Shown here piece after piece: positions 1-44,297 of a stretch of 64,000 bases of DNA (positions are counted from its first letter, which is position 1; the number at the start of each line of letters is the position of its first letter). The position numbers and the translations under genes are program-made. The stretch lies in the IMG/VR virus record IMGVR_UViG_3300014720_000001, positions 62,001 through 126,000 of that record. The stretch is one strand, 5' to 3'. The notes under the pieces were generated by a model, which was not told the DNA's origin, did not search any database, and was given only the letters and a program-made list of their open reading frames with translations.

Positions 1-463
1 GATCATCAGACTCAAGCAGTCGGTTCAGTTTGCCGTACGCGTCGATAGAGTTGGCAACTTGTCGGCCACCGTACGCGCCGGCTCCGGCGCCAGCCAGATT
101 AAACAGCGCATTACTTGACGACCCGTCTTGATTCTTTACGGCAGCAATCGCGGGTGGCGGAGCCGTTTTTGTAAGCAGCATGTTCTTAGCCGCGGTTGCA
201 CCGAGGCCGCCGATGCCGCCCATGAGCGCGTAGTCCAACACGGCACGCCGTTTTTTCTTTCCTTGTAGCGCACCAATCAACCCGCCTGCGCCAGCACCGA
301 TAGCGGCGTTTTGGAGATACGGGTTGCTAAGCACCTGCGAAAGATCAGCTTGCTTCGTTAGCGCAGTGGTCACCGCAGCCACCTTCTCAACCGCCGCGTC
401 GGGGGTGCGGGTTGCGATAGCCGATAAACCGCGCGCTAATTCTTGTGCGTCAGTTGTATTCAT
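1..463 (-). CDS. Glycine-zipper membrane protein with K-x-A motifs (partial, runs off window start)
   Basis: ATG at 461-463, 2 nt downstream of the stop of the 457-aa ORF. My translation MNTTDAQELARGLSAIATRTPDAAVEKVAAVTTALTKQADLSQ...GAGAGGLIGALQG...GGIGGLGA stays open to position 1. Not in the ORF track. Confidence 0.75.
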   Translation of the reverse strand, partial: MNTTDAQELARGLSAIATRTPDAAVEKVAAVTTALTKQADLSQVLSNPYLQNAAIGAGAGGLIGALQGKKKRRAVLDYALMGGIGGLGATAAKNMLLTKTAPPPAIAAVKNQDGSSSNALFNLAGAGAGAYGGRQVANSIDAYGKLNRLLESDD

Positions 464-465
464 GA

Positions 466-1839
466 TTACAGCAACTCACGAGCTTTTTGCTGCGCTTCGA
501 GATTACTCTTTATGCTCTCGGCGCGGATCTTTTCCATTTCAATCAGCTGCTTGATATCAAAATCGGCGAGTTGGCCGGCTTCTAACCGTTTTCGCAACAG
601 CGCCTGCATCGCGGCGCCCGAGCCGGTGAAGTTCGGCGCAATTTCGGCGATCTGGTTGTATGCGGAAGCTACCTCGTGCGGGTCGTAGCCGGAGATAACC
701 GGGTCGTTCAGAATAAGATCGTTCAGCACGCCACGCGATTTGATTTGCTGTAGTTTGTTTTCGTGCTCCGCGTCGGACATGCGCATAAACGCTTTTTGTT
801 TTTGCTTAGTCGGGTCATTGGCCTTGCCAGCTTCCGTGTCCATTTCTCCGGCTAGACCCGCTGGGCTCATCAGTTTGCCGAGATGGCCCATCGTACCGCT
901 ATAGGATGTCAGGGGCGGGGCCGAGTCTTGTTTTTTTTTAACCGCCGCCACCTTTAAAGCTAGCGGCGCGGTTTTGGGGTCGTGAAGGATTGAGCCGGTT
1001 ACGGGTGTCGGAGCCGCTTTCTTTTCGTCTGCCGGCGCCGCGAATGCCGCAAGCTTATTCTGTGCGTCGTTATGCAGTTCTACCGCTTTGATAACGTTCT
1101 CTACCAACGTCACAACGGGCAGATTACCGAAGTAATCCTGCTTTGTGGTGGCCTGTTTTGTGAAGTGCGGGTAAACCGCTGCAATTTTATTAAGGGTTGA
1201 CGCGCCCATGTCGCCGAGCCGTAAACCAACTTCGCGCACAGCGTCGTTAAACGACATGTGACCCGGAACGCGGAAATACTGGGCCAGCTCTTCCATTGCG
1301 CTTGCCGCTTTGTGGTGCGCAACCGTAGCCTGCCGGCGCGTCTCTTCCATAGCCTGCTTGGCGGCTTGTTTCTGGCTGTATGTACGCATGACCGCTGAGT
1401 GCTCATCGCGGGGCGGCGGGGTGTACGTCTTTTCTGGTAATACACTCTTGGCGGCGGCCGCTTTGTTTAATGCGGCGTTGCGGCGGGATATAAACCCAGT
1501 TGGCGACACCGCGTACTCGGTTGATATAACGCTGTTTTGCGTTAGCTCGGCCGACGTCTTTACATGTTTTGGATACAACGCGTTCATAACAACGTCTGCA
1601 TCTGCCAGCTGAAAGTCGGCAGCTTTCTCAAGCGTCGTCTCGCCTAGCTCGCGCTGCTTATTGGTGCGGCCAGTGTTATAGGCGTGCACCATAAGATTGA
1701 TGTGCCCGGCCGGGATATTGGCGTCCGACGCGCTTTTGATAATTGCAGCGTTAGGTGTCTCGCCGCCGTTAACCAACGTCGCAGCGCGCTCGATGGCGCT
1801 TAACAGCTTTTGCTCAGCTTTTTTACTTAGTGCCCGCAT
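466..1839 (-). CDS. Hypothetical Ala/Lys-rich protein, probable virion protein
   Basis: 457-aa ORF tightly packed with its neighbours; several K-x-A motifs; no recognisable catalytic motif. Confidence 0.7.
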   Translation of the reverse strand: MRALSKKAEQKLLSAIERAATLVNGGETPNAAIIKSASDANIPAGHINLMVHAYNTGRTNKQRELGETTLEKAADFQLADADVVMNALYPKHVKTSAELTQNSVISTEYAVSPTGFISRRNAALNKAAAAKSVLPEKTYTPPPRDEHSAVMRTYSQKQAAKQAMEETRRQATVAHHKAASAMEELAQYFRVPGHMSFNDAVREVGLRLGDMGASTLNKIAAVYPHFTKQATTKQDYFGNLPVVTLVENVIKAVELHNDAQNKLAAFAAPADEKKAAPTPVTGSILHDPKTAPLALKVAAVKKKQDSAPPLTSYSGTMGHLGKLMSPAGLAGEMDTEAGKANDPTKQKQKAFMRMSDAEHENKLQQIKSRGVLNDLILNDPVISGYDPHEVASAYNQIAEIAPNFTGSGAAMQALLRKRLEAGQLADFDIKQLIEMEKIRAESIKSNLEAQQKARELL

Positions 1840-2770
1840 CGATTTTCTCCGGGTAGTGCAGTTCTTGAATCAGATTTTGATGCTGCAAAGAACCGCCAGC
1901 CGCAATAATCATCATTTCGTCATTGCGTAATTCTGCTGCGCCGTCATCAAAGGGTAACATTTTTACAGCTACGGAATCTAGTTTTGTCCCTACTTTAAAC
2001 GGCAGCGTAGCCAACATTGCGCCAATATTCTCGACGATAGTTGCCTGTGACTTCGAGGCGTTGTCGCTGTTTTTCTCGATCTCTACGTATTTTACAAAAG
2101 AATCGATCAGCGGTAACTGGGTATGGCTGTTGACCGGTACAGTAAGGCTGGCAATTGCCGCCTTGTATTTCATCGAGTGTACGGCGAAATCTTGGAAAAA
2201 CGCCGAGACGCCGCCCGCAGAATCTGGCTTTGGAATGACCAGCCCGCGATTAATAGCCGCGTCGAGAACGTGCTGGCCGCCGCGGTAGCCGAGCAGTTTC
2301 CACAGCAGGTCGTAGTGGCGCTCCTGTAGTCCGCGAGTTACCGCATCTGCCATCACCACGTTAACGACATAGTCAGTGTTTTGCAGTTTTGCGCGAACAT
2401 CAAAAAACGTGTTCGCGTACGCGTCGATGATGTCCGGTTCAGTACCTAGTTTATCGGCAATCTCTTGATTTGATTCGCCGGCTAAGATGCGCGCTTCGAT
2501 CGCCCAGCGGCTTGGCTTTTTATCGTCTGCCCATATGGCGTGCGCCCAGTACATCGGGCCGTCGCGCAGCATCGCGCCGTACAGCGCGTCCGGGTTATTA
2601 TTGGCGCGCTCAAAATGGCGCTTTAAACGTAACGAGCGTTGAATCCATGTGAAGCCTTCCGGGCCGTCAAACTGGCGGGACGGTTTTTTACCGCCGCTGT
2701 CGATTTGTACTGCCCGCAACCACCGCCAGTTGGGCGGGCGCAGCGGATTGGCGCAAAAAGCGTTCAACAT
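1823..2770 (-). CDS. Hypothetical protein
   Basis: 315-aa ORF overlapping its neighbours in operon fashion. Confidence 0.7.
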   Translation of the reverse strand: MLNAFCANPLRPPNWRWLRAVQIDSGGKKPSRQFDGPEGFTWIQRSLRLKRHFERANNNPDALYGAMLRDGPMYWAHAIWADDKKPSRWAIEARILAGESNQEIADKLGTEPDIIDAYANTFFDVRAKLQNTDYVVNVVMADAVTRGLQERHYDLLWKLLGYRGGQHVLDAAINRGLVIPKPDSAGGVSAFFQDFAVHSMKYKAAIASLTVPVNSHTQLPLIDSFVKYVEIEKNSDNASKSQATIVENIGAMLATLPFKVGTKLDSVAVKMLPFDDGAAELRNDEMMIIAAGGSLQHQNLIQELHYPEKIDAGTK

Positions 2771-7759: not shown

Positions 7760-8480
7760 TGTCCGCAATACTCCGAAGCATGGCTGCGATCGCGTTCGCC
7801 TTGATCTGCGTTGCTGTCGGAGCGTTTGGGTCTTGATAGCTGGGCCCAAACGGACGCCCGATCGACGCGGCCGCCTTCTCGGAACGGTCCCACCACGCGG
7901 CTGCCTTCGACGGGTCGGCTTCGGGCGGGGCGGCGTTCGGGGGCATGGGTCCGCCCGGAGGCGTCGGACCGCCCGGAGGTTGCATGCCGCCCTGCGCGTT
8001 CGGGTCTTGCGGCGGCGGCGCCATCGGGCCGCCCGGAAGCGCGGTTTCAGCCGGCGGGGCGCCAGTTGTGCCCGGCGGCAGCACCAGCGACTCGGGCGGC
8101 ACCTGAACGCCCATCGCATTCATAATGGCCGTGAGCTGCTGCTGCATGTTGTACAGCCGGTAGTCAAGCATCTGCATCATCTGCTCGGGCTTGAGCTTTT
8201 GCTGCGCGCCGGCAGGAGCTGCGCCCGGAGCGGCGGGTGCGGCGGGCGCTGCGGGAGGTGCAGCGGGAGGCGCCATTCCCATAGCCGCTGGATCCACTGG
8301 CGGTGCAGCTGCTGCAGCGACAGCAGACGGATCGGCCGGCGGTACAGCCCCCATGGCGGCTGGGTCAACCGGCGGAGCACCACCAGCAGCAGCGGGATCC
8401 ACCGCCGCTCCGGGCACTAATGCAGATTTTTCAAAGCGCGCTTTCGCGAGCGCGATAAGTTCGGGGTTGACCGTGAACAT
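7749..8480 (-). CDS. Pro/Ala-rich low-complexity protein
   Basis: 243-aa ORF with PPVDPAAMG repeats and an EKSA motif near the N-terminus; SD-like GGAGG upstream. Confidence 0.75.
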   Translation of the reverse strand: MFTVNPELIALAKARFEKSALVPGAAVDPAAAGGAPPVDPAAMGAVPPADPSAVAAAAAPPVDPAAMGMAPPAAPPAAPAAPAAPGAAPAGAQQKLKPEQMMQMLDYRLYNMQQQLTAIMNAMGVQVPPESLVLPPGTTGAPPAETALPGGPMAPPPQDPNAQGGMQPPGGPTPPGGPMPPNAAPPEADPSKAAAWWDRSEKAAASIGRPFGPSYQDPNAPTATQIKANAIAAMLRSIADNAG

Positions 8481-14140: not shown

Positions 14141-14497
14141 TTACCTTTCTGGGCGGTAAAGACGTAACTTCCTGTTGGTCTTTGCCCGGGCAGCGTACGC
14201 CTTGTACGCCGCAGCTAGTTCGCGGGCTTTGATATCTTCTTCGTCAACGTCTGGCTCGGTCATTTTGCCGGCCAGATGTCCGGCCAATCCGCCGCCAACC
14301 GTAGCCAGCATGAGCGGGGTATACGCCACATTACCGAGCGCCTTGAACGAGTCCGACAACGACGGCAGTTCCAGCGCGGCTTTTACAAACGCATCCGCTG
14401 CGTCGAGCCGCTGCGTCAGTGCCGAGCCGGTGAGTTGTTCTTCAGCGCACCGCTGGAGAAAACCCAGCTTAAAAGCTTCTTTTTCAGTGACATCCAT
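14141..14497 (-). CDS. Small glycine-zipper protein
   Basis: 118 aa; N-terminal EKEAFKLGF; VGGGLAGHLAG segment. Confidence 0.7.
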   Translation of the reverse strand: MDVTEKEAFKLGFLQRCAEEQLTGSALTQRLDAADAFVKAALELPSLSDSFKALGNVAYTPLMLATVGGGLAGHLAGKMTEPDVDEEDIKARELAAAYKAYAARAKTNRKLRLYRPER

Positions 14498-16801: not shown

Positions 16802-16931
16802 AGTTAAATTACTCCTGATTTGAACCACACTTATTTCTGCTGGAGTCACTGGCGCTGCAAACGACAGCGCCATGACGGCCAGCAACCACAACACCAAACA
16901 CAGCAAAAACGCGGCAACGAATGTGCCCATG

Positions 16932-29802: not shown

Positions 29803-31632
29803 TCAGCGCGGCGCAATTGGCGAGCGGAACTGCACCGGTGATTGAAACTGCGGTTGGCCTGCGCCGTAGTACGCCGCCGCGCCAGCTACCGGAATAGCCG
29901 TAGCAGCGTGTTGCCCGGCGGCTTGCAGACCTTTACCGGCTAACTGCCCGACGCGCCCGGCACCACCAGCGGCGGCGCCAGCAAGCGTCCCGGTCGCACC
30001 AACAATATCTTTTGCGATCGATTTACCCGGCGCGTTAAGCATGTTTGCGCTGCCCCGCATAACCGCATCGCCACCGCGAGCCAGCGCGCCGCTCGCAGCG
30101 CCTAGTCCTTTACCGGCCGCAGTCACCGCGCCACGCGCTCCCGCAGCCAGCCCCCGCCCAACCATACCGCCAAACGCAGCTAAGTTAGGCGCGGATGTCT
30201 TCTCGTTCACACCGTAGTCTTGTTGAACGTTGCCCGCGCCAGTCGGCACCGGGCTATTAGCCTCGCGCTGCTTGTCGTCGATCGGCTTGCTGCTGCCGCG
30301 AGAGCTAGGCGTGCAGCTCATTTCCGTCTTGCCGCGGGGCGCACTGGAGACAGCTTTCTTTTCTTTCTTGGTTTTCTTCTTGCTGCCAACCGGTCGGCAC
30401 GAATCGTTGCTGTACGGCTTCTTGCCCGGCACGGCTTCGTAGCCTTCCCAACAGCGGGCGACCTTCATGCCGAACTCAAGCGCCGAGCCCTGTTTGACGC
30501 CAGTCACGCTAGCGTTCTGCAGCTGCGGCATGAGCTGTTCAATGATATTTTTGTTGTGGGTCAGAAAGTCGTACATTTGTCGCCCCTGTTCGCTGTTCAT
30601 GTTGGGATCACGGCCCATCAGCATCGTGGTACCAAACTCCGGGCTTAACTTACTGAGCGCGTTAATCTGGTCCATGGGGTTGCCGCCCTGTCCGCCGCCG
30701 ACCATGTTGTAAAGCGCATTGGCGCCTTGGCCAACCATGCGCCGCGGGCCGTCGCCAAACATGCCCGCCCCGGCCGCGCCCAGACCAGCAGCACCGAGAC
30801 CCAGCGCGCCCATCGCGCCGCCCAGACCGTAGTTGCCGCGGCCGCCCATGAACGCGCCGGCCAACGCCAGCGGAACACCAGCACCGATGGCGTAGCGCGC
30901 CTCCGTCGGCAGGCTGTTCCACATGCCCATCAAGCCGCCGTTGGCACCCGCAGCGTTGGGATTCGCCTCGCCGTGCTGCTGCGCCATCGCCTGCGTTGAC
31001 GCCTGCTGATTTTCAATCGCCTGCGCGGTGGGTTCAGCCGCACCGCCGCCCACAAGACCAGTGGCGCGACCAGCGCCATACATCGCGCCGGCACCAGTGG
31101 CCACGTTCAACGGATTGAGCTTGTCGCCAACCGGGCTCGTGCCAAACATGCGGCCAGCTTCCGTCTGCACGGGACGCACAACGCGGTCGCCGAGTTTGCC
31201 GCCGGTAGCCGCAGCACGACCGGGGCCGTTCATGGCATACCGTGCAGCGTCATCAGCGTAATTCAGACCGTGGCGCACAGCGTCTTGCGAAACTTGGCCG
31301 ACGCTCCCAACAAACTTCGCGCCCTGTACCGCCTTGTTTGCGACTGCTTGCCCGGCACCGCTGATGCGATTTCCTACCGCGTCGTCAACTTTGTTAAAGC
31401 CTTTTGCGACCGCAGCGCCGACGGGTTTGGCGCGGTCTGCCACGGCGGTAACAACCGGCTTGGCGCGTTCAACACCCTTGGACACGAGGCTTTTTGCAGC
31501 CGGCAGCGCGCGATTCGCGGCGTAGCGGGCAACATTACCAACCATGTTTTTTACGCCGTCTGCTACGCCGGCGTCTTTTTCCATGTCAGCGTTAGCAGCG
31601 AGAAACGCGCCAAAACGTTGTGCGTCATTCAT
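29803..31632 (-). CDS. Gly/Ala-rich multi-module probable virion protein
   Basis: 609 aa; N-terminal RFGAF...MEKDA; glycine zipper; internal ALEFGMKVA followed by a CWEGY...SCRP mini-module. Confidence 0.75.
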   Translation of the reverse strand: MNDAQRFGAFLAANADMEKDAGVADGVKNMVGNVARYAANRALPAAKSLVSKGVERAKPVVTAVADRAKPVGAAVAKGFNKVDDAVGNRISGAGQAVANKAVQGAKFVGSVGQVSQDAVRHGLNYADDAARYAMNGPGRAAATGGKLGDRVVRPVQTEAGRMFGTSPVGDKLNPLNVATGAGAMYGAGRATGLVGGGAAEPTAQAIENQQASTQAMAQQHGEANPNAAGANGGLMGMWNSLPTEARYAIGAGVPLALAGAFMGGRGNYGLGGAMGALGLGAAGLGAAGAGMFGDGPRRMVGQGANALYNMVGGGQGGNPMDQINALSKLSPEFGTTMLMGRDPNMNSEQGRQMYDFLTHNKNIIEQLMPQLQNASVTGVKQGSALEFGMKVARCWEGYEAVPGKKPYSNDSCRPVGSKKKTKKEKKAVSSAPRGKTEMSCTPSSRGSSKPIDDKQREANSPVPTGAGNVQQDYGVNEKTSAPNLAAFGGMVGRGLAAGARGAVTAAGKGLGAASGALARGGDAVMRGSANMLNAPGKSIAKDIVGATGTLAGAAAGGAGRVGQLAGKGLQAAGQHAATAIPVAGAAAYYGAGQPQFQSPVQFRSPIAPR

Positions 31633-31782
31633 GATCGTTGGTTCCTACTGAAGATTGTTCAGATTGTTCTTGCGGATATTCACACCTGCCGCCTTCGCAA
31701 CAGGTTTCTAGAATGATGCGGCAAAACGGACAGACCAGTTTGCCGCGGATCTCAACTGGCGGACTTTCGCACAGCGGACAGA

Positions 31783-32364
31783 TCACCACTCAAACTCCAC
31801 TGGATTGCGTGTCTGATAGTCGAAGTTAAAATCGACGGGCGAGCGAAACTTTACACCGGGCAGCGGCAGCTTCGGCGCCACTGTAGCCGTGCCGCCGAGC
31901 AGCCCGGCTGCCGCAAGCGTCGGTACGCCGTACGGTGTATCGGCCAGCCGCGACAGCCCGCGACCGCCAGCTTGCAACGCCCGGCCGGCATAATCTGTTA
32001 CGTGACCAGCGCCTCGCGCGGCGCGACCAGCAGCCCGGCCGCCATACCCGAGCGCCGACATCAGGTCGCCATAAAAGCCTGTGCTCTTGGCGCCGTGGTC
32101 GATCACGTTCTTGCCGCCCTTCATTGCTTCGCGGCCCAACCCCTTGGCGAGCCCGGCAGCACCACTGGTAGCTTGCCCCACACCTTCCGCTGCGCCGCCA
32201 AAGCCGCGCACAATGTGTTTCGCGCCCTGATTAATCGTCTTGGCGCCGCTGGCAATTCCGCGGCCCGCAGCACCGAGCCGCGCGAAGATAGAACCGAGGT
32301 TAATACTGGGCGCGGCAGATTTTTCTAGCTGCCCGACGGTATATCCAAACTCAAACGGCGTCAT
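31783..32364 (-). CDS. Gly/Ala-rich protein with an N-terminal FEFG...EKSA leader
   Basis: MTPFEFGYTVGQLEKSAA; GGAG SD. Confidence 0.75.
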   Translation of the reverse strand: MTPFEFGYTVGQLEKSAAPSINLGSIFARLGAAGRGIASGAKTINQGAKHIVRGFGGAAEGVGQATSGAAGLAKGLGREAMKGGKNVIDHGAKSTGFYGDLMSALGYGGRAAGRAARGAGHVTDYAGRALQAGGRGLSRLADTPYGVPTLAAAGLLGGTATVAPKLPLPGVKFRSPVDFNFDYQTRNPVEFEW

Positions 32365-32386
32365 TGGTAGCTCCTTTTGTTATGAA

Positions 32387-33043
32387 TTAAGGTGTGAACT
32401 GCTGCGATGCGATCTGCGCTGCGGTGTTTTGCGGCGGCGCAGAACTGGTGGTCATCGCCACGGTGTTAATCGGATTGCGAATCATGGCGTTCCCCAACGA
32501 CTTCAGCGGTGTCATCGGAATCGACAGGCCGCCCTCGCCAAGACCGGCGCGAAGTCCCGGAATCGGAACTTGTTTCCAGCTGGTTTGCATCAGCGGAATG
32601 TGTTTCTGAATCCCCTGCGACATGGCGGTGTTCAGCTGGGTCGCGCCGCGGTTTGCGGCAAGCATGCCGCGCGCGGCTTGTGTACCCGCGGCGCCTGTTG
32701 CCTGCAGACCTTTACCAACAGCCTGCGCCACGCGGCCGCCGCCCATGAGCGCTTTGCCGCCCCGCATCAGACCTTTCGCTGCGCCGCCGAGCAAACCCGC
32801 GCCCGGAATCAAACCCAGCGCCATCATGCCGGCCGAACCCAGCGAGCCGAGCACGTTACCTTGGCTCACATTGTGCATTAAGTCTTGCCCGGCCTGTACC
32901 GAGCTGAGCCCGGGAACAAAGTAACCGACGGTGCGGGCGAGCTGATTGTCTTGGTTCAGCGGGTTAAAACCACCCAAACTCGGCCCGAGCGCGCGTTTCT
33001 CAGTGGCTGCTCCAACACAATAACCAAACTCGTACGGCTGCAT
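32387..33043 (-). CDS. Gly/Ala-rich protein with an N-terminal YEFG...EKRA leader
   Basis: MQPYEFGYCVGAATEKRAL; GGAG SD. Confidence 0.75.
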   Translation of the reverse strand: MQPYEFGYCVGAATEKRALGPSLGGFNPLNQDNQLARTVGYFVPGLSSVQAGQDLMHNVSQGNVLGSLGSAGMMALGLIPGAGLLGGAAKGLMRGGKALMGGGRVAQAVGKGLQATGAAGTQAARGMLAANRGATQLNTAMSQGIQKHIPLMQTSWKQVPIPGLRAGLGEGGLSIPMTPLKSLGNAMIRNPINTVAMTTSSAPPQNTAAQIASQQFTP

Positions 33044-33060
33044 GATCCACTCCTACAATG

Positions 33061-33426
33061 TTATTTAAACTGAGTGCACCGGCGACGCGACATTTGGGCC
33101 CGAAACCGGCGAGCCATTTGGCGCACGTCTTTGTTGTAACAATGATAACTGAAAAAGTGCCCAAACATGAAGTGGCACGGGGTTGCGCATAACGTAATGA
33201 GGTTATTTTCCGTCAATTCCAGTTCCGGCGCAATGCTAACCGGAAAAATATGATGCACCTCAAGATTGGTCTTTCGGCCACAGACTTCACACGCCGGATG
33301 TTTCGCTAAATGTTCTGCCCGGACTCGCCGCCATTCTTTAGATCGCTGCCGCTGCTCAAAGATGTATCTGGGGCGCAACCAGCGCGGGAGGTACTGGGTG
33401 AGGACGGCAAGAAGTGTCGAAAACAT
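33061..33426 (-). CDS. HNH endonuclease
   Basis: CEVCG...LEVHHI...NLITLC...CH...GH. Confidence 0.85.
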   Translation of the reverse strand: MFSTLLAVLTQYLPRWLRPRYIFEQRQRSKEWRRVRAEHLAKHPACEVCGRKTNLEVHHIFPVSIAPELELTENNLITLCATPCHFMFGHFFSYHCYNKDVRQMARRFRAQMSRRRCTQFK

Positions 33427-33541
33427 GACCGCACCCCGCGACTTCCGCACACATGTTTTGGTTCATACGGGCAGTTTTGACAGCGGCGACCACAACACAT
33501 TTCTTGCTGCAATAAAAATTGCCACGACAACGGCGCCGGAC

Positions 33542-33895
33542 TCATAGCACCGTGGTAGCGTGGGTAAACTTCTTCTCGTAGTGCGAATAGATTTCCGCAA
33601 ACGCCACACCCCACGCAGCGTCATGCGCTAACTTGTTAAACGCCTCGTCTGTCTCGGCGTTGTCTAGCCTGTGGTTCCACGCACGCGCATGCGCCCACTC
33701 ATGGAGCAAGACGTCCATAGAGCGGGATTCATCCAGACTCTTGTCGATCTGGATGTGAAACTTCTTGCCCTGCTTCCAACAGCGGCCCTCTAGTTTAGAT
33801 AGCTTGACCCGGCGCACGCTCACGGGAAAAGCCGCGGGACACTCGTCTTTGAGCATCCGCAGGAGGGCGTGGTAATACTTAAAACGAGCCGCCAT
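33542..33895 (-). CDS. Zincin-like (HExxH) metalloprotein
   Basis: VLLHEWAHA plus a later H (AHDAAW), SprT-like spacing. Confidence 0.6.
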   Translation of the reverse strand: MAARFKYYHALLRMLKDECPAAFPVSVRRVKLSKLEGRCWKQGKKFHIQIDKSLDESRSMDVLLHEWAHARAWNHRLDNAETDEAFNKLAHDAAWGVAFAEIYSHYEKKFTHATTVL

Positions 33896-33970
33896 GCTCC
33901 GTCCTCCTGTAGGGCGTCCTTGCCACAACGGAGTGATTATACTGGAGCCGGCGAGCTTTGGCGGCAGTGA

Positions 33971-34798
33971 TTATTTTGCGTTCTTTTGCAGCTGCGCTAA
34001 CACCCGGGCAGCGCTTTCTTTAACTTCCTCGTCGCCCGCGTCTTCCGCCTTTTCTTCGGACTTTTCTTCCTTTTCGTCGCTCTCGGGTTTTTCTTTCTTT
34101 TTGCTAAAGCTCCGGCCGATGTCGGCGCCGATGTTGCCGCCCATGTGAGCGCCGGCACCCAGTCCAGCCGCCCCACCAGCGAGGAGGCCCATTCCCGCGC
34201 CCGGTGCGCCGCCCAATGCACCGCCGCCCAACGCGCCAAGAATACCGCCGCCTGCGCCGCCAGCTAAACCACCCAGACCACCGCCAGCGAGACCGCCGAG
34301 CACGGAGAGCACAGAAGCCTCTTTCTTTTCCCACGACGGCTTGCCCAGCGCGCTACCCGCGGCTGCATAGCCTAGACCACCGCCGCCAACTGCCCCGCCG
34401 ACACCGCCGGCTGCAAGCGTATTAAGTAGCTGCAGTTGCTGCTCAGGTCGAATGTGGCCGGGGCGCATCGCTTTTACAAACTTGCCGGAGCGCGCTAACT
34501 GCCGCACATAGTTCGCCAATTGTGTGCTCGACGGACCGAACACGGCCTTACCAACACGCGGATTCATGAGCGCAAGCGCGAGTGTGCCCACAGCGCCAAC
34601 TGGAGCGCCAATCGTCGCGCCAAGCCCGACGCCTGTGCCTTTTGCGGCGCCGCGGCCAGCGCCTTCCGCCCGATGACCAGACGGCGACGTGAGCGCGCCC
34701 AGACCCGCGCCGACACCGGCAGTTGCAGGAATCGTCACAAACGATTTCTTGATCTGCTGGCCCATCTGCATGCCGAATTGCTGCGGCGTAACACTCAT
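33971..34798 (-). CDS. Glycine-zipper membrane protein with a QFG...KKS leader
   Basis: Start reassigned to MSVTPQQFG; long GxxxG tracts; KEAS and KESA motifs. Confidence 0.75.
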   Translation of the reverse strand: MSVTPQQFGMQMGQQIKKSFVTIPATAGVGAGLGALTSPSGHRAEGAGRGAAKGTGVGLGATIGAPVGAVGTLALALMNPRVGKAVFGPSSTQLANYVRQLARSGKFVKAMRPGHIRPEQQLQLLNTLAAGGVGGAVGGGGLGYAAAGSALGKPSWEKKEASVLSVLGGLAGGGLGGLAGGAGGGILGALGGGALGGAPGAGMGLLAGGAAGLGAGAHMGGNIGADIGRSFSKKKEKPESDEKEEKSEEKAEDAGDEEVKESAARVLAQLQKNAK

Positions 34799-34901
34799 GC
34801 GATCACCCGTGGCTTGAATAGAGTTTTGAATCTTGCGTGTGGCGACGTGTTGCACGATTTTCTCGAACAGCTTGCGCCGAGATAACGCCAACGCCATCAG
34901 T

Positions 34902-37085
34902 TTATTTGGCGGAATCGGCGGCATCGTCGTCGTCCAGAATGCTCTTGCTGGCTTGGGGTTTGGCGTCTGGATATTTTAACAGCCGGCGCTTCTTTTTTGA
35001 AAGCGGGCGTTTCGGGGTGTCCGGCGTGAGTTTAAGCGACTGAAATACCGCGCTTTCTTTCTCTTGACTGTCGTCTTGTAGTAACAATTTGCGTCGGCGT
35101 TTGAGATACTTTTGTAACTCTTGCTCCTGATACGCTTCGAGCATAGTTTTAACGCGATCAGACCTAGCCGGTGCGACTAACTTAGTGGGATCAATCGCCC
35201 AGTGTTGCAGCGCCCAGCCGCGTCTTGGCGTGGGATTGGTCATGAACGGCCCGCCATGGCGCGCCTTGAAGCTCGCCCAGCGCTTAATTTGCCGCGCATC
35301 TTCGTCGGGGATCCGGCGGCCTGAGTTATAGTTCTGGTACCACTCCAGCCAGCCCTTCGGATCATGCTCGGTGACCCATTCCGGCTTCCACTCTCCCAGA
35401 CTGGCTAAGCGCGGGCCTTCTTTCTCATACAGCGACTTGTACACACCCATGCGATGCAGCTGGCCGGGTGTAAAGTCAGGCTGAAAAGCGGGCAGCTCGG
35501 CGCCCTGCTTCTCTTGTTCTTTCTGCTTGCGGTACTTGTCGCCCTCTTCTTTCAAGATCTTGCGGAAGATCTCGTTGAGCTGTTCTTTCTCGGCGGTGAG
35601 GTGTTCGAGCACTTCGTCGCCGGTGCGCTCGCGCTTGTAGCCCATGAGCTTGCCCACCATGCTCGGGGCTTGGCTGGCGCTTAGATATCTTTGCACTTGG
35701 ACGTTCTTGAGTTCTTCTGGCAGATCACGGTGCGAGTCAAAACGTAAGCCGCGGCCACGAGCTTGCTGGCTGCGTGACTCGTGCCAGTGCGGGTCTAAGA
35801 GCTGGATAAGACTCGTGCCCTTGGTAGACAAGCCCTCGGCGCCAGCAGGGCCAATGAGTAACGCCCGGAGCTTGCCTTGGTTGTATGCGTCCACAGCGGC
35901 TTGGCGCGCCTTTGAGCTAACGCCGCCATGGAAAAACGCATGCGGGATCTTGGCTTTCTCTAGGCCCGCAGCATAAGGGGCCAAGCCAGAGTCAATGAAA
36001 TTGGAGTAGATAATAGCTTTCTTGCGCTTGTCTTCGCCCAGCGTCTTCTGCAAGTTCTGAAAGGCTGTCTGAAGCTTGGCGCTCTGCTGAAACGCTTTGG
36101 CCGGGTCTTTGTCGGCACGAAACGGCTGCGTGGATAAGCTCACTTGGCGCAGACCAGTTAAGAAGCTATTTAACTTCGCCAGCTCGTCTTTAGATAGCGG
36201 AAACTCTTGGTCCAGCTTCCAGAGAAACCCGGGCGGAATCTTGGTACGAATAGCTTTTTGAATCTTGTCTTGCGCAGGAGACAGGGGCACGCGCACGACT
36301 TCTTCTTTGACGTCCACTCCTTCGGGCGTCTTGCTGGGCTGGTAATCCACTTTGCCCTGTAGAAGCTGGCGCAGTTCCTTCTCGTTCTTGACGACTGGCT
36401 TCACACCCGGCTTCACGCCCCGCAGCCAGCCAAACAAACCCGGTTTAACAGTCTTGTAGTCGATGTAGCGCTTTTCGAACTCTTCCGGCGTGATCGATTT
36501 GTTGTGCAGCATGGACAGCAAATTCGCCAGATCCGTGGGCGAATTCGTGATCGGCGAACCAGTAAGTAACATTAAACGGTTCGCTTGGGCAGCAGCTTCG
36601 GCAGCTCCGGCAGAACTGGCGCTCCCCGGATTGCGTAATCTATGCGCCTCGTCCATAATCAGCGTCTTGGGCGGCTTCTGGAACTTCTTGCCCAGCGCCA
36701 ATCCCGTGTAGCTCATGATCTCAGGATTAGAGTTACGCGTGAACTTCTTGATCTCTTTGTCGAAGTTGCCACGTAAACTGGCCGGGACCACCACGCCGTA
36801 CTCTTCGCCGTCCTGCTCTTTGGCGGCTTCTGCAGCAGCCAATGAAGACAGCGATTTGCCGGACCCTAGGCCGTGATAGACAAGTAATCTGGGATCGGGG
36901 CCCGCGATCCTGTCGGCAATGCGTTGCTGGTGCTCTTGCAGTTGAATATCGGGCAGAAGTTCGGCTTGTTTACTGCTGCCAAATTGGCGCTCAGAATTTC
37001 CGGCTGCCAATTCGGCCACTTTAGTCCAGACGCTCTCGGGCAGCGCGGACTTGTGGGGCGCAGAATCGTCGAGAATGCTGTTCAT
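34902..37085 (-). CDS. SNF2-like superfamily 2 helicase with an added C-terminal module
   Basis: HGLGSGKS, IMDEAH, LLTGSPITN, GAEGLSTKG, QARGRGLR; second module GWLEWY..Y..GRR..DEDARQIKRW. Confidence 0.85.
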   Translation of the reverse strand: MNSILDDSAPHKSALPESVWTKVAELAAGNSERQFGSSKQAELLPDIQLQEHQQRIADRIAGPDPRLLVYHGLGSGKSLSSLAAAEAAKEQDGEEYGVVVPASLRGNFDKEIKKFTRNSNPEIMSYTGLALGKKFQKPPKTLIMDEAHRLRNPGSASSAGAAEAAAQANRLMLLTGSPITNSPTDLANLLSMLHNKSITPEEFEKRYIDYKTVKPGLFGWLRGVKPGVKPVVKNEKELRQLLQGKVDYQPSKTPEGVDVKEEVVRVPLSPAQDKIQKAIRTKIPPGFLWKLDQEFPLSKDELAKLNSFLTGLRQVSLSTQPFRADKDPAKAFQQSAKLQTAFQNLQKTLGEDKRKKAIIYSNFIDSGLAPYAAGLEKAKIPHAFFHGGVSSKARQAAVDAYNQGKLRALLIGPAGAEGLSTKGTSLIQLLDPHWHESRSQQARGRGLRFDSHRDLPEELKNVQVQRYLSASQAPSMVGKLMGYKRERTGDEVLEHLTAEKEQLNEIFRKILKEEGDKYRKQKEQEKQGAELPAFQPDFTPGQLHRMGVYKSLYEKEGPRLASLGEWKPEWVTEHDPKGWLEWYQNYNSGRRIPDEDARQIKRWASFKARHGGPFMTNPTPRRGWALQHWAIDPTKLVAPARSDRVKTMLEAYQEQELQKYLKRRRKLLLQDDSQEKESAVFQSLKLTPDTPKRPLSKKKRRLLKYPDAKPQASKSILDDDDAADSAK

Positions 37086-37099: not shown

Positions 37100-37966
37100 T
37101 TATTTTGACGCGCTGTTATCTAAATCAGCGACTGGAGTCGGCCCCAGTGTAGCCTGTGCCGCCAGCTCGCGCTCCTGCTGCTGGATCTGCAATTCTACCC
37201 AATCCCGGTACAAACTCACACGGACAAATGCCGCCTCGTCGGCGTAGTTGCCGTTGGGCGTCTTGTCGTCGTGCATCAGAAACGAGTTAATCCCCGCTAA
37301 CTTATTGCCGATGAACATCCCGCCCCCTGAGTCGCCGGGCGCAATGAGAAATTCCAGCGGCATGCGCCCTTTGCCGGCCGTGGGCTTGCAGAACAAGACT
37401 GCATCCGCCGAGCTTTCAATGACGTTGTGCCCCGCCCGCCGTTTGCCGTCGGAGTCTTGAGTGACGCCAGTTGTAAACGTGCCGTGCGAACCAAAGCCGG
37501 CAATCGTGATCGCTTTGCCCAGCTCGTCTTGGTCTGTGTACAGCGGCGTATAGAACTCTAGCTTGAAGTCTTCCGGGCTATAGCACAGCGCCAGATCATG
37601 CCAGCCCACGCGGTTCTCTTCATAGTCTTTGTGCCGGACCATGCGCGCGACGGGATATTCTTTGCCCTCTGCCGTGATCACCGTCTGCTCAAACGTGTTA
37701 TTTACAACGTGCGCTGCTGTTAAGACCCAGTGCGGGCGAATGACCACCGCCGAGCCCAGCTGCGTGTGTTCTTTTTGCGGGCAGTCGGGATTCGAGCACT
37801 TCACTTTGGCCCGCAGCCGCACCACGCTGGGAAACTGCTTGCCGAACTCCAGATACTTCTCGTCTGGCGTACCGGGGTCGCGGGTGCCGGCCAGCGCCAC
37901 ACGTGACGCGACGAGCAGAATGATCACAAAGCGCAGCAGGCGGGCAAATAGTTCTTGCACGTTCAT
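37100..37966 (-). CDS. Trypsin-like serine protease (S1), exported
   Basis: WVLTAAHV, HDLAL and GDSGGG catalytic triad; N-terminal hydrophobic segment. Confidence 0.9.
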   Translation of the reverse strand: MNVQELFARLLRFVIILLVASRVALAGTRDPGTPDEKYLEFGKQFPSVVRLRAKVKCSNPDCPQKEHTQLGSAVVIRPHWVLTAAHVVNNTFEQTVITAEGKEYPVARMVRHKDYEENRVGWHDLALCYSPEDFKLEFYTPLYTDQDELGKAITIAGFGSHGTFTTGVTQDSDGKRRAGHNVIESSADAVLFCKPTAGKGRMPLEFLIAPGDSGGGMFIGNKLAGINSFLMHDDKTPNGNYADEAAFVRVSLYRDWVELQIQQQERELAAQATLGPTPVADLDNSASK

Positions 37967-41539: not shown

Positions 41540-41627
41540 CTGATCAGCTCCTTAAACATGAGGACATCGATTGCGCAGAAACCCATGCAATCCGTCTGGG
41601 GACGCCAATAACACATTGGCATCATTA

Positions 41628-41657: not shown

Positions 41658-41659
41658 TA

Positions 41660-42928: not shown

Positions 42929-43162
42929 TTAACCATTGCGCACCGCCTGTTCCAGCAGCTCGACACGCCTGTACAGCACGTCGAAAGACTGCGCCCGGAT
43001 TTTGTCCATCTCGACGATCTTTTCCATCAGGTCGAGCAGGCGCAGCTGGGCTTTCTCTAGCTGCGCGACCCGATTACGCAGGTCAACGATCCGTCCCTTG
43101 TCGGTCTGCGGTAGATCGACGGGGAACAGGGACCCAATGTCGGTCTCAAACATCTGACTCAT
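42929..43162 (-). CDS. Small coiled-coil protein
   Basis: 77 aa; downstream of promoter-motif copy 3. Confidence 0.55.
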   Translation of the reverse strand: MSQMFETDIGSLFPVDLPQTDKGRIVDLRNRVAQLEKAQLRLLDLMEKIVEMDKIRAQSFDVLYRRVELLEQAVRNG

Positions 43163-43235
43163 CGGTCATTCTCCTTGGCCGCGCAGAAGCGGCAGAGAGG
43201 GTTCAGAACCACCCAATACACTATGGGCGTCACTG

Positions 43236-43265
43236 AATATGACCGGAATCAGGCTTTTATTTAGC
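43236..43265 (-). promoter_or_regulatory. Phage promoter-like motif, copy 3
   Basis: Minus strand GCTAAATAAA-AGCCTGATTC-CGGTCATATT; overlaps the AK-stop of 43257..44297. Confidence 0.7.
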
Positions 43266-44297
43266 TATCAGCGCATTGGCTAACTTAGCGCCAAATTCCA
43301 TCGCACTGGAGCACTTGCAGTTCCATTTGCGCAGGGATTTGTTAATGCGCGAGTCAGGGTCACTTTTGGTTTTTGCGCCGGTGTTAACACGTTTCATGCC
43401 GCACATCCGGGAGCAAAAAGAGTTCTGGCGCTTGGCTCGTTCGCCCTTGGGTTTACTCTCAGTCACGGGCGCTTTTAAGTTCCCGCCAGTCTCGCGCTCG
43501 TAGCTTTTGCGTCCCTTTTCGTTAAGCCCGCCTTCAGGATTCTTGCCAGCAGAACGTTGCCAAGCCGGAGTGCTGCCTAACTTCTCGCCGCCTACAGAGT
43601 TTGCCGTCCCAAACGCTGCGTTGCCTGTAATATCACCCGATGACGAGATGGCGCCATATGAATTAATCGGGTTGGCATTCGGAGAAGATCCGCCGCCTAC
43701 TGGAGGAAGCTGCCCGGAGGGTGCCGGCGAGCCCATATTCGGAGGCTGCGCGGCGGGGGCTTGCGCTTGACCTTGCGGGGCGGGAGCCTGCATCCCCATC
43801 GGCAGGGGAGTACCAGCGGCAGGCATGGCATAGCGTTTAATGCCGACGTTTGCAGGCTGCATGGCGGCCTCTCGGGCCTCCAGTTCAGCTCTTTCATTCT
43901 CTATGGCCTGCATTATGGGTTGCGACAAGACAGCAGAAAGCTTCGCCATCAGCTTGTTTACACCATAATTTGGCTTTGTTTCTGCATTACACCGCTCGCT
44001 CTTGGTCTTGGTGACTTGGGGTGGATTTTCGCCGGCTACAGTGGGCTTATCACTGTGCGGCTGAGTGATATACACCTCTTTGGTATCCGCTTTCTTGGAG
44101 AATTTCCTGTAAATATCGAGGGCGACAGAGTTTACAGCCGATTGTTTACTATTTGTTTCGGCTTTTTCAGGCTTCTTTTTGTCATATGCGTACATAGGAA
44201 GTTTCTTTTTGGTTGGATACTCGTGTGCCCAGCGTTTAGCAATGTCTGGATGCGCGGCCCAGAGGAACCGACGCTGTTTTTCTGATTGGAATGGCAC
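43257..44297 (-). CDS. Multi-module basic protein with a DUF6321-like C-terminal module
   Basis: N-terminal MPFQSEKQRRFLWAAHP module; C-terminal AWQRSAGKNPEGGLNEKGRKSY...FCSRM...SRINKSLRKWNC (family name recalled from memory). Confidence 0.65.
   Translation of the reverse strand: MPFQSEKQRRFLWAAHPDIAKRWAHEYPTKKKLPMYAYDKKKPEKAETNSKQSAVNSVALDIYRKFSKKADTKEVYITQPHSDKPTVAGENPPQVTKTKSERCNAETKPNYGVNKLMAKLSAVLSQPIMQAIENERAELEAREAAMQPANVGIKRYAMPAAGTPLPMGMQAPAPQGQAQAPAAQPPNMGSPAPSGQLPPVGGGSSPNANPINSYGAISSSGDITGNAAFGTANSVGGEKLGSTPAWQRSAGKNPEGGLNEKGRKSYERETGGNLKAPVTESKPKGERAKRQNSFCSRMCGMKRVNTGAKTKSDPDSRINKSLRKWNCKCSSAMEFGAKLANALIAK

What the first reader, a model, noticed from the sequence alone, without database searches (positions are those of the whole stretch)
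1..44297. Pervasive (E)K-x-A motif with an F-x-x-G/F-G leader: a candidate polyprotein-cleavage or capsid-loading code
Seen: adjacent genes start with near-identical leaders, MTPFEFGYTVGQLEKSA (31783-32364), MQPYEFGYCVGAATEKRA (32387-33043), MNDAQRFGAFLAANADMEKDA (29803-31632) and MSVTPQQFGMQMGQQIKKS (33971-34798). Variants occur internally (ALEFGMKVA; AMEFGAKLA in 43257-44297) and in EKEAFKLGF (14141-14497). K-x-A also falls at module boundaries. In 20646-22094 the order is KQA, 2H domain, KAA, DUF5661-like module, EKGA, module, KAA. In 34902-37085 it is KQA, helicase, EKQGA, second module, EKESA. In 29803-31632 the CWEGY module sits between MKVA and EKKA. By eye the motif is not enriched in the metabolic genes or the 45-59 kb small genes. 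Known: T4 and phiKZ head proteases cut internal head proteins at short motifs ending in Glu. Inference: this phage packages and matures a large internal proteome with a Lys-x-Ala-specific protease or targeting signal instead.
Basis: partly seen in the sequence, partly recalled or inferred. Interest (0 to 1): 0.85.

Follow-up and report, generated by a model that had tools for sequence, protein, structure and literature searches.

The report
E-K-x-A motif marking phage head proteins
A strict four-residue motif, Glu-Lys-any-Ala, recurs in the head-assembly and probably packaged proteins of this ~200-kb phage and its cultured relatives, most likely as the cutting or docking site of the head-maturation protease, which would be a new specificity for a familiar kind of system.

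Summary
Plain K-x-A is at chance (95 observed, 98 expected). E-K-x-A ranks first of 5,183 'ab.c' patterns for over-representation (25 vs 6.2, z 7.9). It also ranks first for being a conserved island in variable sequence. It is not pervasive over 1-44297. It concentrates in the four-gene leader cluster (29.8-34.9 kb), a few other N-terminal leaders, and above all the head-morphogenesis module. That module starts at 466-1839 and continues just beyond the window's low edge, next to an HK97-fold capsid protein and a homolog of head-maturation proteases. Nine of 56 proteins carry the motif within their first ~40 residues (0.85 expected). The cultured relatives Salmonella phage Arash and Vibrio phage D69 show the same enrichment. 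In Arash, 29 of 34 sites lie in proteins detected in virions by mass spectrometry. The M-x-P-[FY]-E-F-G...E-K-x-A leader is real and conserved, but it is lineage-specific and found only on Gly/Ala-rich paralogs. One copy is internal. Best reading: a maturation-protease recognition motif with a new specificity. Cleavage itself is unproven. The helicase 'boundary' sites are not supported.

The parts
32314..32364 (-). Leader of protein C (31783-32364): aa 1-17, canonical M-x-P-F-E-F-G-x3-G-x2-E-K-x-A.
   Evidence: (37.7 bits).
32990..33043 (-). Leader of protein B (32387-33043): aa 1-18, canonical with one extra residue before E-K-x-A.
   Evidence: (35.6 bits).
31570..31632 (-). Variant leader of protein D (29803-31632): aa 1-21, ending E-K-D-A. 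Orthologs in other genomes carry the canonical leader.
   Evidence: E-K conservation is 0.91 against a protein mean of 0.52.
34742..34798 (-). Leader-like element inside protein A (33971-34924): aa 43-61, ending K-K-S. It is internal, preceded by 42 conserved residues.
   Evidence: A-like bodies in other genomes carry the canonical leader at the true N-terminus.
29803..34924 (-). Leader cluster: four Gly/Ala-rich paralogs A-D (17-20% Gly, weak glycine-zipper hydrophobic segments). Interspersed with them are a SprT-like zincin peptidase (33542-33928), an HNH nuclease (33061-33450) and a small Zn-ribbon ORF (31625-31789).
   Evidence: E-K-x-A is 4 vs 0.5 expected in this block.
8421..8480 (-). 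N-terminal 20-aa leader ending F-E-K-S-A in the Pro/Ala-rich 243-aa protein encoded between the RNAP genes (7749-8480). A second conserved site lies at aa 201-204 (7869-7880).
14474..14497 (-). N-terminal M-D-V-T-E-K-E-A of the 118-aa protein (14141-14497), followed by the conserved F-K-L-G-F.
   Evidence: (0.92 vs 0.73).
13187..13213 (-). Tandem E-K-A-A-S-E-K-K-A in 12923-13777, at a long-indel junction.
21219..21230 (-). E-K-G-A at the C-terminal edge of the DUF5661 module of the 2H-SAK polyvalent-type protein (20646-22094). Orthologs gain or lose modules right after it.
30352..30363 (-). E-K-K-A closing the poly-Lys tail of the CW-x-GYEPVPG mini-module in protein D. Recurs after this module in many related proteins.
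466..1839 (-). First gene of the motif-dense head block that is inside the window (457 aa). It has a conserved L-E-K-A-A at aa 71-74 (1618-1629). The block continues beyond window position 1 with a 321-aa protein, the 485-aa head-maturation protease homolog, a 447-aa scaffold-like protein, 141-aa and 192-aa proteins, the 313-aa HK97-fold capsid protein and a 129-aa protein.
   Evidence: locus L089, same contig.
37100..37966 (-). Trypsin-like serine peptidase with a signal-peptide-like N-terminus and a conserved D-E-K-Y-L-E-F-G-K-Q-F-P. A secondary candidate protease, or another EFG-motif carrier.

Best explanation
E-K-x-A, usually preceded by a hydrophobic residue and followed by a small one, is the recognition motif of this phage clade's head-maturation protease. 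I think it is most likely the cleavage motif.

The protease is the 485-aa protein encoded 0.5-2 kb beyond the window's low edge, between the portal-side genes and the scaffold-like and capsid genes. The motif marks the ends of short N-terminal propeptides (8-41 residues). It also marks internal processing sites in scaffold-like, head-accessory and packaged proteins, and in the protease's own C-terminal part.

The window's four adjacent Gly/Ala-rich proteins (A-D) are paralogs. I infer that they are packaged head-internal or ejection proteins. Their 17-21-residue leader has two parts. The first is a family-specific segment with alternating hydrophobic residues ([FY]-E-F-G-x3-G), plausibly a docking or targeting strand. 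The second is the general E-K-x-A site.

Shown: the motif's over-representation, strict conservation, location and clade-wide recurrence; the protease homology; and virion residence of motif-bearing proteins in Arash.

Inferred: that the motif is cut, where the scissile bond lies, and that A-D are packaged.
For: (1) Unbiased scan of 53 proteins: E-K-x-A ranks 1 of 5,183 for over-representation (25 vs 6.2, z 7.9). It ranks 1 of 105 for conserved-island score (0.243, next best 0.129).
(2) Position profile: E +0.13, K +0.18, x -0.13, A +0.11, with flanks at -0.1 to -0.24. Permuted controls show nothing of the kind.
(3) Strictness: K is kept in 0.90 of ortholog residues against 0.66 background. 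K-to-R is 0.015 against 0.062. Changes at A go to S or G 48% of the time against 26% background.
(4) Localisation: head module 14 vs 1.9, leader cluster 4 vs 0.5, other blocks at expectation.
(5) Nine of 56 proteins have the motif in their first ~40 residues, against 0.85 expected.
(6) Context: the 313-aa protein matches a solved HK97-fold capsid protein (6wkk, E 2e-4), and the 447-aa protein is scaffold-like.
(7) The N-domain of the 485-aa protein is homologous to genes lying between portal and capsid genes in phages Arash and G and in a cluster-C mycobacteriophage, and in a syntenic position in D69, whose genes are unannotated. His103 and Ser164 are invariant. Four of seven members hit PHROG 18299, head maturation protease, at 8e-20.
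(8) The protease carries conserved sites 66-80 residues from its C-terminus. Most homologs have L-[EQ]-K-x-A-[SN] at the end of the protease domain. This parallels the C-terminal self-cleavage of SPN3US gp245 (PMC10052503).
(9) Independent replication: Arash head block 16 vs 2.0, rank 1; D69 16 vs 2.6.
(10) In Arash, 29 of 34 in-CDS sites are in MS-detected virion proteins. None is in the capsid protein, the major tail protein or the 2,548-aa gp229.
(11) At long-indel junctions E-K-x-[AS] exceeds a local-composition null: 5 vs 1.06, P about 0.001.
Against: No cleavage product has been observed for any member of the clade. The Arash paper reports 80-100% tryptic coverage for gp218-gp225, including proteins with the motif near the N-terminus. 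So propeptides are not obviously lost, and a cut after Ala is not obviously complete. The enzyme settings of that search are not stated and the preparation is only gradient-purified.

The protease assignment rests on transitive homology. The window-lineage protein itself hits only an unannotated PHROG. Its N-domain did not fold (pLDDT below 50). The profile search against PDB sequences found nothing.

Two conserved sites (aa 94 and 153) lie within the presumed protease domain, where cutting would be odd. Proteins A-D have no detectable homolog in Arash, so their packaging is inferred from composition and the leader alone. One conserved site sits in the actin-like protein (23560-24591), probably by chance. 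The numbers inside the window proper are small.
Confidence: 0.55

Rival explanations
1. E-K-x-A is a docking or loading motif that is not cleaved. It would be a short linear motif through which head-internal proteins bind a common partner (scaffold, portal, capsid interior or the protease acting as a carrier) during prohead assembly. The A-D leader would be a retained N-terminal targeting peptide, comparable in logic to encapsulin cargo-loading peptides.
For: All the enrichment, conservation and virion-association evidence fits this equally well. Arash's 80-100% coverage of motif-bearing proteins suggests that segments upstream of the motif remain in particles. Sites inside the protease domain (aa 94, 153) and in RNAP subunits are easier to accept as binding sites than as cut sites.
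Against: The motif sits preferentially at the ends of short N-terminal leaders and at hinges or indel junctions. It occurs several times in small scaffold-like proteins, for example three times in a 129-aa protein. It also recurs near the end of the protease domain and in its C-terminal tail. The small-residue requirement at the fourth position is typical of a protease P1 pocket. Every characterised precedent in large myoviruses involves cleavage.
Confidence: 0.25
2. The motif is cleaved, but by another peptidase encoded in the window and not by the head protease. Candidates are the SprT-like zincin (33542-33928), the trypsin-like enzyme (37100-37966), the M10 peptidase (17695-18531) or the Ntn-hydrolase-like protein (41660-42751). 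This would be the processing of polyvalent or injected proteins that Iyer et al. 2017 proposed for zincin peptidases.
For: The SprT-like gene lies inside the leader cluster. The 2H-SAK and DUF5661 protein has the motif at a module junction. The trypsin-like enzyme has an intact triad and its own conserved EFG motif. A cut after Lys would be invisible in tryptic data, which fits Arash's full coverage. Iyer et al. predict peptidase processing of polyvalent proteins.
Against: The densest motif clusters flank the head protease and the capsid gene, not these peptidases. The trypsin-like protein has a signal-peptide-like N-terminus, so it is probably exported. It also lacks an acidic residue at the position six residues before the catalytic Ser. 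I did not test whether these peptidases are conserved in Arash or D69, which share the motif.
Confidence: 0.1
3. No dedicated function. The leaders reflect paralogy of a tandemly duplicated gene family, and E-K-x-A reflects the Glu/Lys/Ala-rich helical linkers and coiled coils typical of scaffold-like proteins.
For: Plain K-x-A at junctions is fully explained by local composition. A-D are distant paralogs (hhalign B-C 96.8%, A-C 78%). The leader occurs only on this family. Many sites lie in Ala-rich helical proteins.
Against: Per-protein and local shuffles keep composition and still give z 7.9 and P about 0.001. Order-reversed and substituted motifs (A.KE, KE.A, EA.K, ER.A, DK.A) show neither enrichment nor the island pattern. 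K-to-R and E-to-D exchanges, which are neutral for helices, are depleted. The same four-residue motif is top-ranked in phages with only 25-38% protein identity to this one.
Confidence: 0.05

Closest known systems
Prohead-protease maturation in giant myoviruses (phiKZ gp175, SPN3US gp245, 201phi2-1), cleaving after [S/A/G]-x-E
   Same: A short P3-x-P1-type motif recurs in many head and ejection proteins. N-terminal propeptides range from about 20 to more than 200 residues. Paralogous internal proteins sit in adjacent genes. The protease removes its own C-terminal part. The virion carries an RNA polymerase (PMC10052503; Arash paper).
   Different: The motif here is E-K-x-A, with Lys and a small residue as the fixed positions, and does not end in Glu. 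The protease groups with a different PHROG and with phage G and cluster-C mycobacteriophage proteins. The capsid protein is small (313 aa) and carries no motif or long propeptide. Cleavage here is predicted, not shown.
T4 gp21 protease ([L/I]-x-E) and the capsid targeting sequence of the T4 internal proteins (Mullaney and Black 1996)
   Same: Several adjacent genes for internal proteins share a leader of about 10-20 residues that ends in the protease motif. The leader combines a targeting part with a cut site (this is my own knowledge of T4; the reference is cited in PMC10052503).
   Different: The T4 sequence is portable to foreign cargo. Here the leader is found in nature only on one family of Gly/Ala-rich bodies. 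One copy is internal. The sequence and motif are unrelated.
HK97-type prohead serine proteases (HK97 gp4, Pfam Peptidase_S78/U35, PHROG 'head maturation protease')
   Same: Position between portal and scaffold or capsid genes. Invariant His and Ser in conserved blocks. Homologs hit PHROG 18299, and one member has a weak Peptidase_S78_2 hit at E 0.16.
   Different: No direct Pfam hit. A Cys-cluster insertion (C174, C177, C188) and a helical C-terminal domain of about 220 residues. The catalytic assignment has not been tested.
Herpesvirus assemblin maturation and release sites ([V/L/I]-x-A followed by S)
   Same: A small residue (Ala) at the last fixed position with P3 as the other determinant. 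A small residue often follows (Ala 0.24, Ser 0.08). This resemblance comes from my own knowledge.
   Different: P3 is Lys and P4 is Glu here. No homology was tested. Resemblance only.
Polyvalent proteins of phages and conjugative elements (Iyer et al. 2017, PMC5512222)
   Same: 20646-22094 combines 2H-SAK and DUF5661 with optional modules. D and related proteins carry mobile mini-modules. Such proteins are predicted to be packaged and sometimes processed by peptidases.
   Different: That work does not describe a delimiter motif. Most module junctions here (51 of 60) lack K-x-A.

Membership tests
Head-maturation protease / propeptide systems of tailed phages | A head-maturation protease gene in the head-morphogenesis module | tested here: met
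   The 485-aa protein lies next to the scaffold-like and HK97-fold capsid genes. It is homologous to Arash gp222, phage G gp19 and a mycobacteriophage protein located between portal and capsid genes. His103 and Ser164 are invariant. Four of seven homologs hit PHROG 18299. The link is transitive, and the gene lies just outside the window.
Head-maturation protease / propeptide systems of tailed phages | A short sequence motif that recurs in head proteins and not in other proteins | tested here: met
   E-K-x-A: head module 14 vs 1.9, non-head blocks at expectation. Rank 1 of 5,183. Replicated in Arash and D69.
Head-maturation protease / propeptide systems of tailed phages | Motif-bearing proteins are prohead or virion components | tested here: inconclusive
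   Met in the relative Arash: 29 of 34 sites are in MS-detected virion proteins. No virion data exist for the window's uncultured phage, and A-D have no Arash homolog.
Head-maturation protease / propeptide systems of tailed phages | Demonstrated cleavage at the motif (neo-termini, size shift) | not testable with these tools
   Only tryptic coverage values are published for Arash (80-100%), and the search specificity is not stated.
T4 / phiKZ-type cleavage code (motif ending in Glu) | P1 = Glu with P3 = L/I or S/A/G | tested here: not met
   The fixed residues are E, K and A, with A/S/G at the last position. So this is a different specificity and not a member of that code.
T4-like capsid targeting sequence | A shared N-terminal leader of about 10-20 residues on several internal proteins, ending in the protease motif | tested here: met
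   B, C and D (and D's orthologs) have leaders of 17-21 residues ending E-K-x-A.
T4-like capsid targeting sequence | The leader occurs on, or works with, unrelated cargo | tested here: not met
   All 18 pattern matches in IMG/VR are on C-, D- or A-like Gly/Ala-rich bodies of one phage lineage. Experimental portability was not tested.
Polyvalent proteins (Iyer et al. 2017) | Several unrelated effector-type domains in one polypeptide, with variable architecture between relatives | tested here: met
   20646-22094 has 2H-SAK, DUF5661, an optional module and a C-terminal domain. Orthologs insert Cys-rich modules or, in one case, a roughly 140-residue segment of unidentified type.
Polyvalent proteins (Iyer et al. 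2017) | Modules delimited by a processing motif | tested here: inconclusive
   E-K-x-[AS] is at 5 of 60 junctions against about 1 expected, but 51 of 60 junctions lack K-x-A.

The most novel reading that the evidence does not exclude
A whole clade of RNAP-carrying phages of about 180-205 kb uses E-K-x-A as a maturation and loading code. The clade comprises an abundant uncultured freshwater lineage plus the cultured Salmonella phage Arash and Vibrio phage D69. A serine head protease of previously unknown specificity cuts at this motif, either after the small residue or after Lys. The [FY]-E-F-G leader is a dedicated capsid-targeting strand that loads membrane-active glycine-zipper ejection proteins alongside the virion RNA polymerase. 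If the leader is portable, it would offer a way to package chosen cargo into these capsids.
Probability: 0.3. Interest if true: 0.7.

Novelty: new variant of a known kind. Interest (0 to 1): 0.55.

Why it matters
Maturation-protease specificities are known experimentally for only a few phage groups, such as T4 and the phiKZ/SPN3US group, and those motifs end in Glu. This analysis finds a different, strict motif from sequence alone. It pinpoints the probable protease and predicts about 25 processing or docking sites and the set of packaged proteins in an abundant but uncultured freshwater phage lineage (more than 1,000 protein clusters for the protease).

The same motif occurs in two cultured relatives, and one of them already has virion mass-spectrometry data. 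So the prediction can be tested immediately. Because trypsin cuts at the motif's own Lys, standard tryptic proteomics could well have missed such processing, which is a practical caution for phage proteomics. If the motif is confirmed, it would annotate otherwise featureless head proteins and define propeptide boundaries for structural work.

Tried and rejected
(1) Megablast of 24.5 kb against cultured phages found no match. tblastn of protein D found none either.
(2) Pfam and PHROG scans of the leader proteins, the isolated leader and the CW module found no family.
(3) A strict leader HMM over all six frames found only B and C, so I dropped the idea of a 'pervasive leader'.
(4) A homolog search with protein C returned 19 hits, all from the same lineage and none named.
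(5) The first junction test was inflated by nested gaps and was redone with de-duplicated junctions. The K-x-A enrichment was then rejected under local shuffling.
(6) AlphaFold2 of the 2H-SAK protein gave mean pLDDT 50, usable only as a rough domain map.
(7) AlphaFold2 of the 485-aa protease failed for the N-domain. The Foldseek PDB search that followed gave no match below E 0.1.
(8) A profile search of the protease alignment against PDB sequences found nothing. Phmmer of the trypsin-like protein against the PDB also found nothing.
(9) A profile search of the big protein database with the protease alignment returned more than 1,000 unnamed close relatives and no annotation.
(10) PHROG and Pfam scans of the head-block proteins were almost empty.
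(11) I considered the trypsin-like enzyme as the Lys-specific protease. I set it aside because of its signal-peptide-like N-terminus and the absence of an acidic residue at the position six residues before the catalytic Ser.
(12) I considered a DNA-level repeat as the cause of the leader similarity and rejected it because of the synonymous differences.
(13) A literature search for the motif string failed on a time-out. A broader search found no description of it.
(14) The single large HMMER job, the metagenome and genome scans and the viral fold library were not used.

Full report
WHAT THE WINDOW IS. All real genes lie on the minus strand. The window is part of a 204.6-kb viral contig, IMGVR_UViG_3300014720_000001. 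It belongs to a lineage of uncultured phages of about 200 kb with dozens of relatives at 64-94% protein identity.

The window encodes:
- a multisubunit RNA polymerase, with beta fused to the N-terminal part of beta-prime (8501-12919) and a separate C-terminal part of beta-prime (5638-7518)
- a 2H-SAK/DUF5661 polyvalent-type protein (20646-22094)
- an actin-like 'volactin' (23560-24591)
- dCMP deaminase, a ferritin-like protein, a methyltransferase and PhoH (26.2-29.8 kb)
- an SNF2 helicase (34902-37085)
- four peptidase-like proteins: M10 with a PG-binding domain (17695-18531), SprT-like (33542-33928), trypsin-like (37100-37966) and Ntn-hydrolase-like (41660-42751)

The nearest cultured phages, Vibrio phage D69 and Salmonella phage Arash, share only about 25% identity in the RNAP.

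CHECKING THE OBSERVATION: THE LEADER. The quoted leaders are present. B (32387-33043) and C (31783-32364) start with a near-identical motif of 17-18 residues, M-x-P-[FY]-E-F-G-x3-G-x2-3-E-K-x-A. Both have good ribosome-binding sites. Their codons differ at synonymous positions, so the similarity is selected at the peptide level.

Across orthologs the leader stays nearly invariant while the bodies fall to about 30% identity. Indels occur right after E-K-x-A. D (29803-31632) has a looser leader in the window, but several of its orthologs carry the canonical one.

In A (33971-34924) the leader-like stretch is internal. The 42 codons upstream are conserved in frame, including an in-frame 9-codon indel, and no SD precedes the internal ATG. 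In some genomes an A-like body carries the canonical leader at its true N-terminus.

A strict profile finds only B and C in the window. A back-translated pattern finds only 18 stretches in all of IMG/VR. They come from 16 contigs, at least nine of which I had already fetched as relatives, so I take them to be this one lineage. All sit on C-, D- or A-like Gly/Ala-rich bodies. The bodies are only distant paralogs. They contain 17-20% Gly and have weak glycine-zipper hydrophobic segments. So the leader is real and functional-looking, but it is a family-specific N-terminal motif and not a general code.

CHECKING THE OBSERVATION: K-x-A. Plain K-x-A is at chance (95 vs 97.9). [EQTV]K.[AS] is mildly raised (44 vs 31). 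E-K-x-A is 13 vs 5.3 in the window's 1-44 kb genes. K-x-A and [QTV]K.[AS] sites are no better conserved than their proteins, and the helicase sites EKQGA and EKESA are poorly conserved.

In the 2H-SAK protein the four K-x-A sites do coincide with an N-terminal segment boundary, two linkers and a helix end. Orthologs gain and lose modules right after '...LKAA', 'IEK-x-A' and 'VKA'. Over 60 de-duplicated long-indel junctions, K-x-A is 9 vs 3.7 against random positions. Against local shuffles it is 9 vs 7.8, so it reflects composition. Only the ordered E-K-x-[AS] survives, at 5 vs 1.06, P about 0.001. 'ALEFGMKVA' belongs to a separate, very conserved mobile mini-module (K-x-A-(G)-R-CW-x-GYEPVPGK-x-PYS-x-x-SCRP, then poly-Lys, then E-K-x-A) that is inserted in many different proteins of this lineage.

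THE REAL SIGNAL. I walked beyond the window's low edge on the same contig. The genes downstream of the RNAP turned out to be dense in E-K-x-A.

I then ran an unbiased scan of every 'ab.c' pattern over 53 proteins with ortholog alignments (14,758 aa). E-K-x-A ranked first of 5,183 for over-representation (25 vs 6.2, z 7.9). It also ranked first of 105 for a 'conserved island' score (0.243; the next best was 0.129).

E, K and A are more conserved than the protein mean, while the x position and both flanks are less conserved. No permuted or substituted control behaves this way. Across orthologs K is kept in 0.90 of residues (background 0.66). K-to-R is four times rarer than background, and changes at A go preferentially to Ser or Gly.

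By block: head module 14 vs 1.9; leader cluster 4 vs 0.5; RNAP block 5 vs 2.1; and 20.6-29.8 kb, 34.9-44.3 kb and 44.3-64 kb all at expectation. Nine of 56 proteins have the motif within their first ~40 residues, against 0.85 expected. These are B, C, D, the 243-aa protein between the RNAP genes (7749-8480), the 118-aa protein (14141-14497) and four head-block proteins.

WHAT THE MOTIF-DENSE GENES ARE. The 313-aa protein matches a solved HK97-fold major capsid protein (6wkk, E 2e-4) and carries no motif. The 447-aa protein upstream of it is charged, low-complexity and helical, with a conserved basic C-terminal helix, which is scaffold-like. It has the motif at residue 29. A 129-aa protein after the capsid gene has three conserved sites.

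The 485-aa protein is the best-conserved gene of the region. Its N-terminal 260 residues are homologous to Arash gp222 (detected in virions by MS), a D69 protein, Bacillus phage G gp19 and a cluster-C mycobacteriophage protein. In Arash, phage G and the mycobacteriophage the homolog lies between annotated portal and capsid genes; D69 has the same gene order, but its genes are all annotated as hypothetical. Across these homologs His103, Ser164, an N-x-N-x-D block, a Cys cluster and Asp236 are invariant. Four of the seven match PHROG 18299, 'head maturation protease', at 8e-20.

I therefore take the 485-aa protein to be the head-maturation protease. It has five motifs itself. Two are conserved at 66-80 residues from the C-terminus. 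A conserved L-[EQ]-K-x-A-[SN] sits at the end of the protease domain in most homologs. That recalls the self-removal of a 64-residue C-terminal propeptide by SPN3US gp245. Structure prediction of this protein failed for the N-domain.

INDEPENDENT REPLICATION. In Arash's syntenic head block E-K-x-A is again the top pattern (16 vs 2.0, z 10.3). It is typically [LMIV]-E-K-x-A-[AS]. In D69 it is 16 vs 2.6. Phage G and the mycobacteriophage, whose proteases are much more distant, show no enrichment.

The Arash paper found 116 proteins in virions, with the RNAP subunits among the most abundant. It mentions neither cleavage nor a protease. Over the whole Arash genome, 29 of 34 in-CDS sites lie in 18 virion proteins: 19 in gp213-gp225, and the rest in the portal, both RNAP subunits (near residues 50-60), gp97, gp100, gp202, gp242 and a few more. 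None lies in the capsid protein, the major tail protein or the 2,548-aa gp229. Arash virions also contain Gly/Ala/Lys-rich proteins similar in character to the window's C and D.

HOW IT MOST LIKELY WORKS. I think E-K-x-A is the recognition motif, and most likely the cut site, of the head-maturation protease. It would delimit short N-terminal propeptides and internal sites in scaffold-like, accessory and packaged proteins. The A-D leader would combine a family-specific docking strand with alternating hydrophobic residues and this general site.

The position of the scissile bond is open. A cut after the small residue would parallel the P3-x-P1 logic of T4, phiKZ and the herpesvirus assemblins. 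A cut after Lys would be invisible in tryptic data and would fit Arash's high coverage.

The main rival is a docking or loading motif that is not cleaved, which the Arash coverage values favour somewhat. Cleavage by another encoded peptidase and a purely compositional origin are less likely, and the controls argue against the compositional origin.

COMPARISON AND NOVELTY. This is the familiar logic of head-protein maturation in large myoviruses, but with a different, strict motif and a protease from a different subgroup. I found no description of it in the searchable literature (the literal-string search timed out). I rate it a new variant of a known kind, with moderate interest. It is directly testable in two cultured phages and by re-analysis of existing data.

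VERDICT ON THE FINDING. The leader family is real, and a narrower motif is strongly real. Plain K-x-A, the helicase boundaries and the word 'pervasive' are not supported.

Noticed in passing
window 30364-30483 (aa 384-423 of protein D); also L015-L062: A very conserved mobile mini-module, K-x-A-(G)-R-CW-x-GYEPVPGK-x-PYS-x-x-SCRP-x-G followed by a poly-Lys tail and usually E-K-x-A. It is inserted in at least six different protein architectures of this lineage. In some genomes it follows DUF6321. It has no Pfam match.
   Followed up: partly
window 8501-12919 and 5638-7518: The RNA polymerase has an unusual split. Beta is fused to the N-terminal half of beta-prime in one 1,472-aa protein, and the C-terminal half of beta-prime is a separate 626-aa protein. 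A conserved Pro/Ala-rich 243-aa gene lies between them. In the relative Arash the RNAP subunits are among the most abundant virion proteins.
   Followed up: partly
window 23560-24591: A full-length match to Pfam 'Volactin' (E 1.5e-62), an actin-fold family I recall being described from haloarchaea, encoded by a bacterial-type jumbo phage and conserved in 18 orthologs.
   Followed up: no
window 37100-37966: A trypsin-like serine peptidase with an intact triad and a signal-peptide-like N-terminus. A nearly invariant D-E-K-Y-L-E-F-G-K-Q-F-P follows the hydrophobic segment. E-F-G as a tripeptide is itself over-represented (6 vs 1.7).
   Followed up: partly
window 33971-34924 / 34902-37085: Gene A starts 23 nt before the helicase stop codon, so the two genes overlap.
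   Followed up: yes
window 20646-22094 and its orthologs (alignment A1): Orthologs of the 2H-SAK protein insert different modules at the same two junctions: a Cys-rich C-x-C-S-G...C-P-x-x-C-x-C-K module, a segment of about 140 residues in one genome, Pro/Thr-rich linkers, or an optional ~70-residue module. This is a clear case of in-place module shuffling.
   Followed up: partly
window 17695-18531: A PG-binding domain fused to an M10 (matrixin-like) metallopeptidase. It is flanked by small proteins with single transmembrane segments (16475-17462, 18543-19318). This could be a lysis or virion-associated cell-wall cassette.
   Followed up: no
window 12923-13777, 14141-14497; L089 9033-9998: Several small or medium proteins near the head block have glycine-zipper hydrophobic segments. 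One has a weak hit to Gly-zipper_YMGG. Several also start with or contain E-K-x-[AS]. These may be further packaged membrane-active proteins.
   Followed up: partly
(proteins P0011, P0075, P0107): Proteins of this phage lineage are deposited at NCBI under bacterial MAG names (Oxalobacteraceae, Alphaproteobacteria, 'bacterium'). That suggests phage contigs mis-binned into MAGs. The protease family has more than 1,000 clusters, so the lineage is abundant.
   Followed up: no
Arash record about 172.5-173.5 kb, minus strand: An unannotated 174-codon open frame in a gap between gp240 and gp241 of phage Arash contains M-M-E-K-V-A-S. It may be a missed gene.
   Followed up: no
window 31625-31789: A 54-codon Cys-rich ORF with a weak Trm112p-like zinc-ribbon hit lies between leader genes C and D and overlaps both ends by a few bases.
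   Followed up: no
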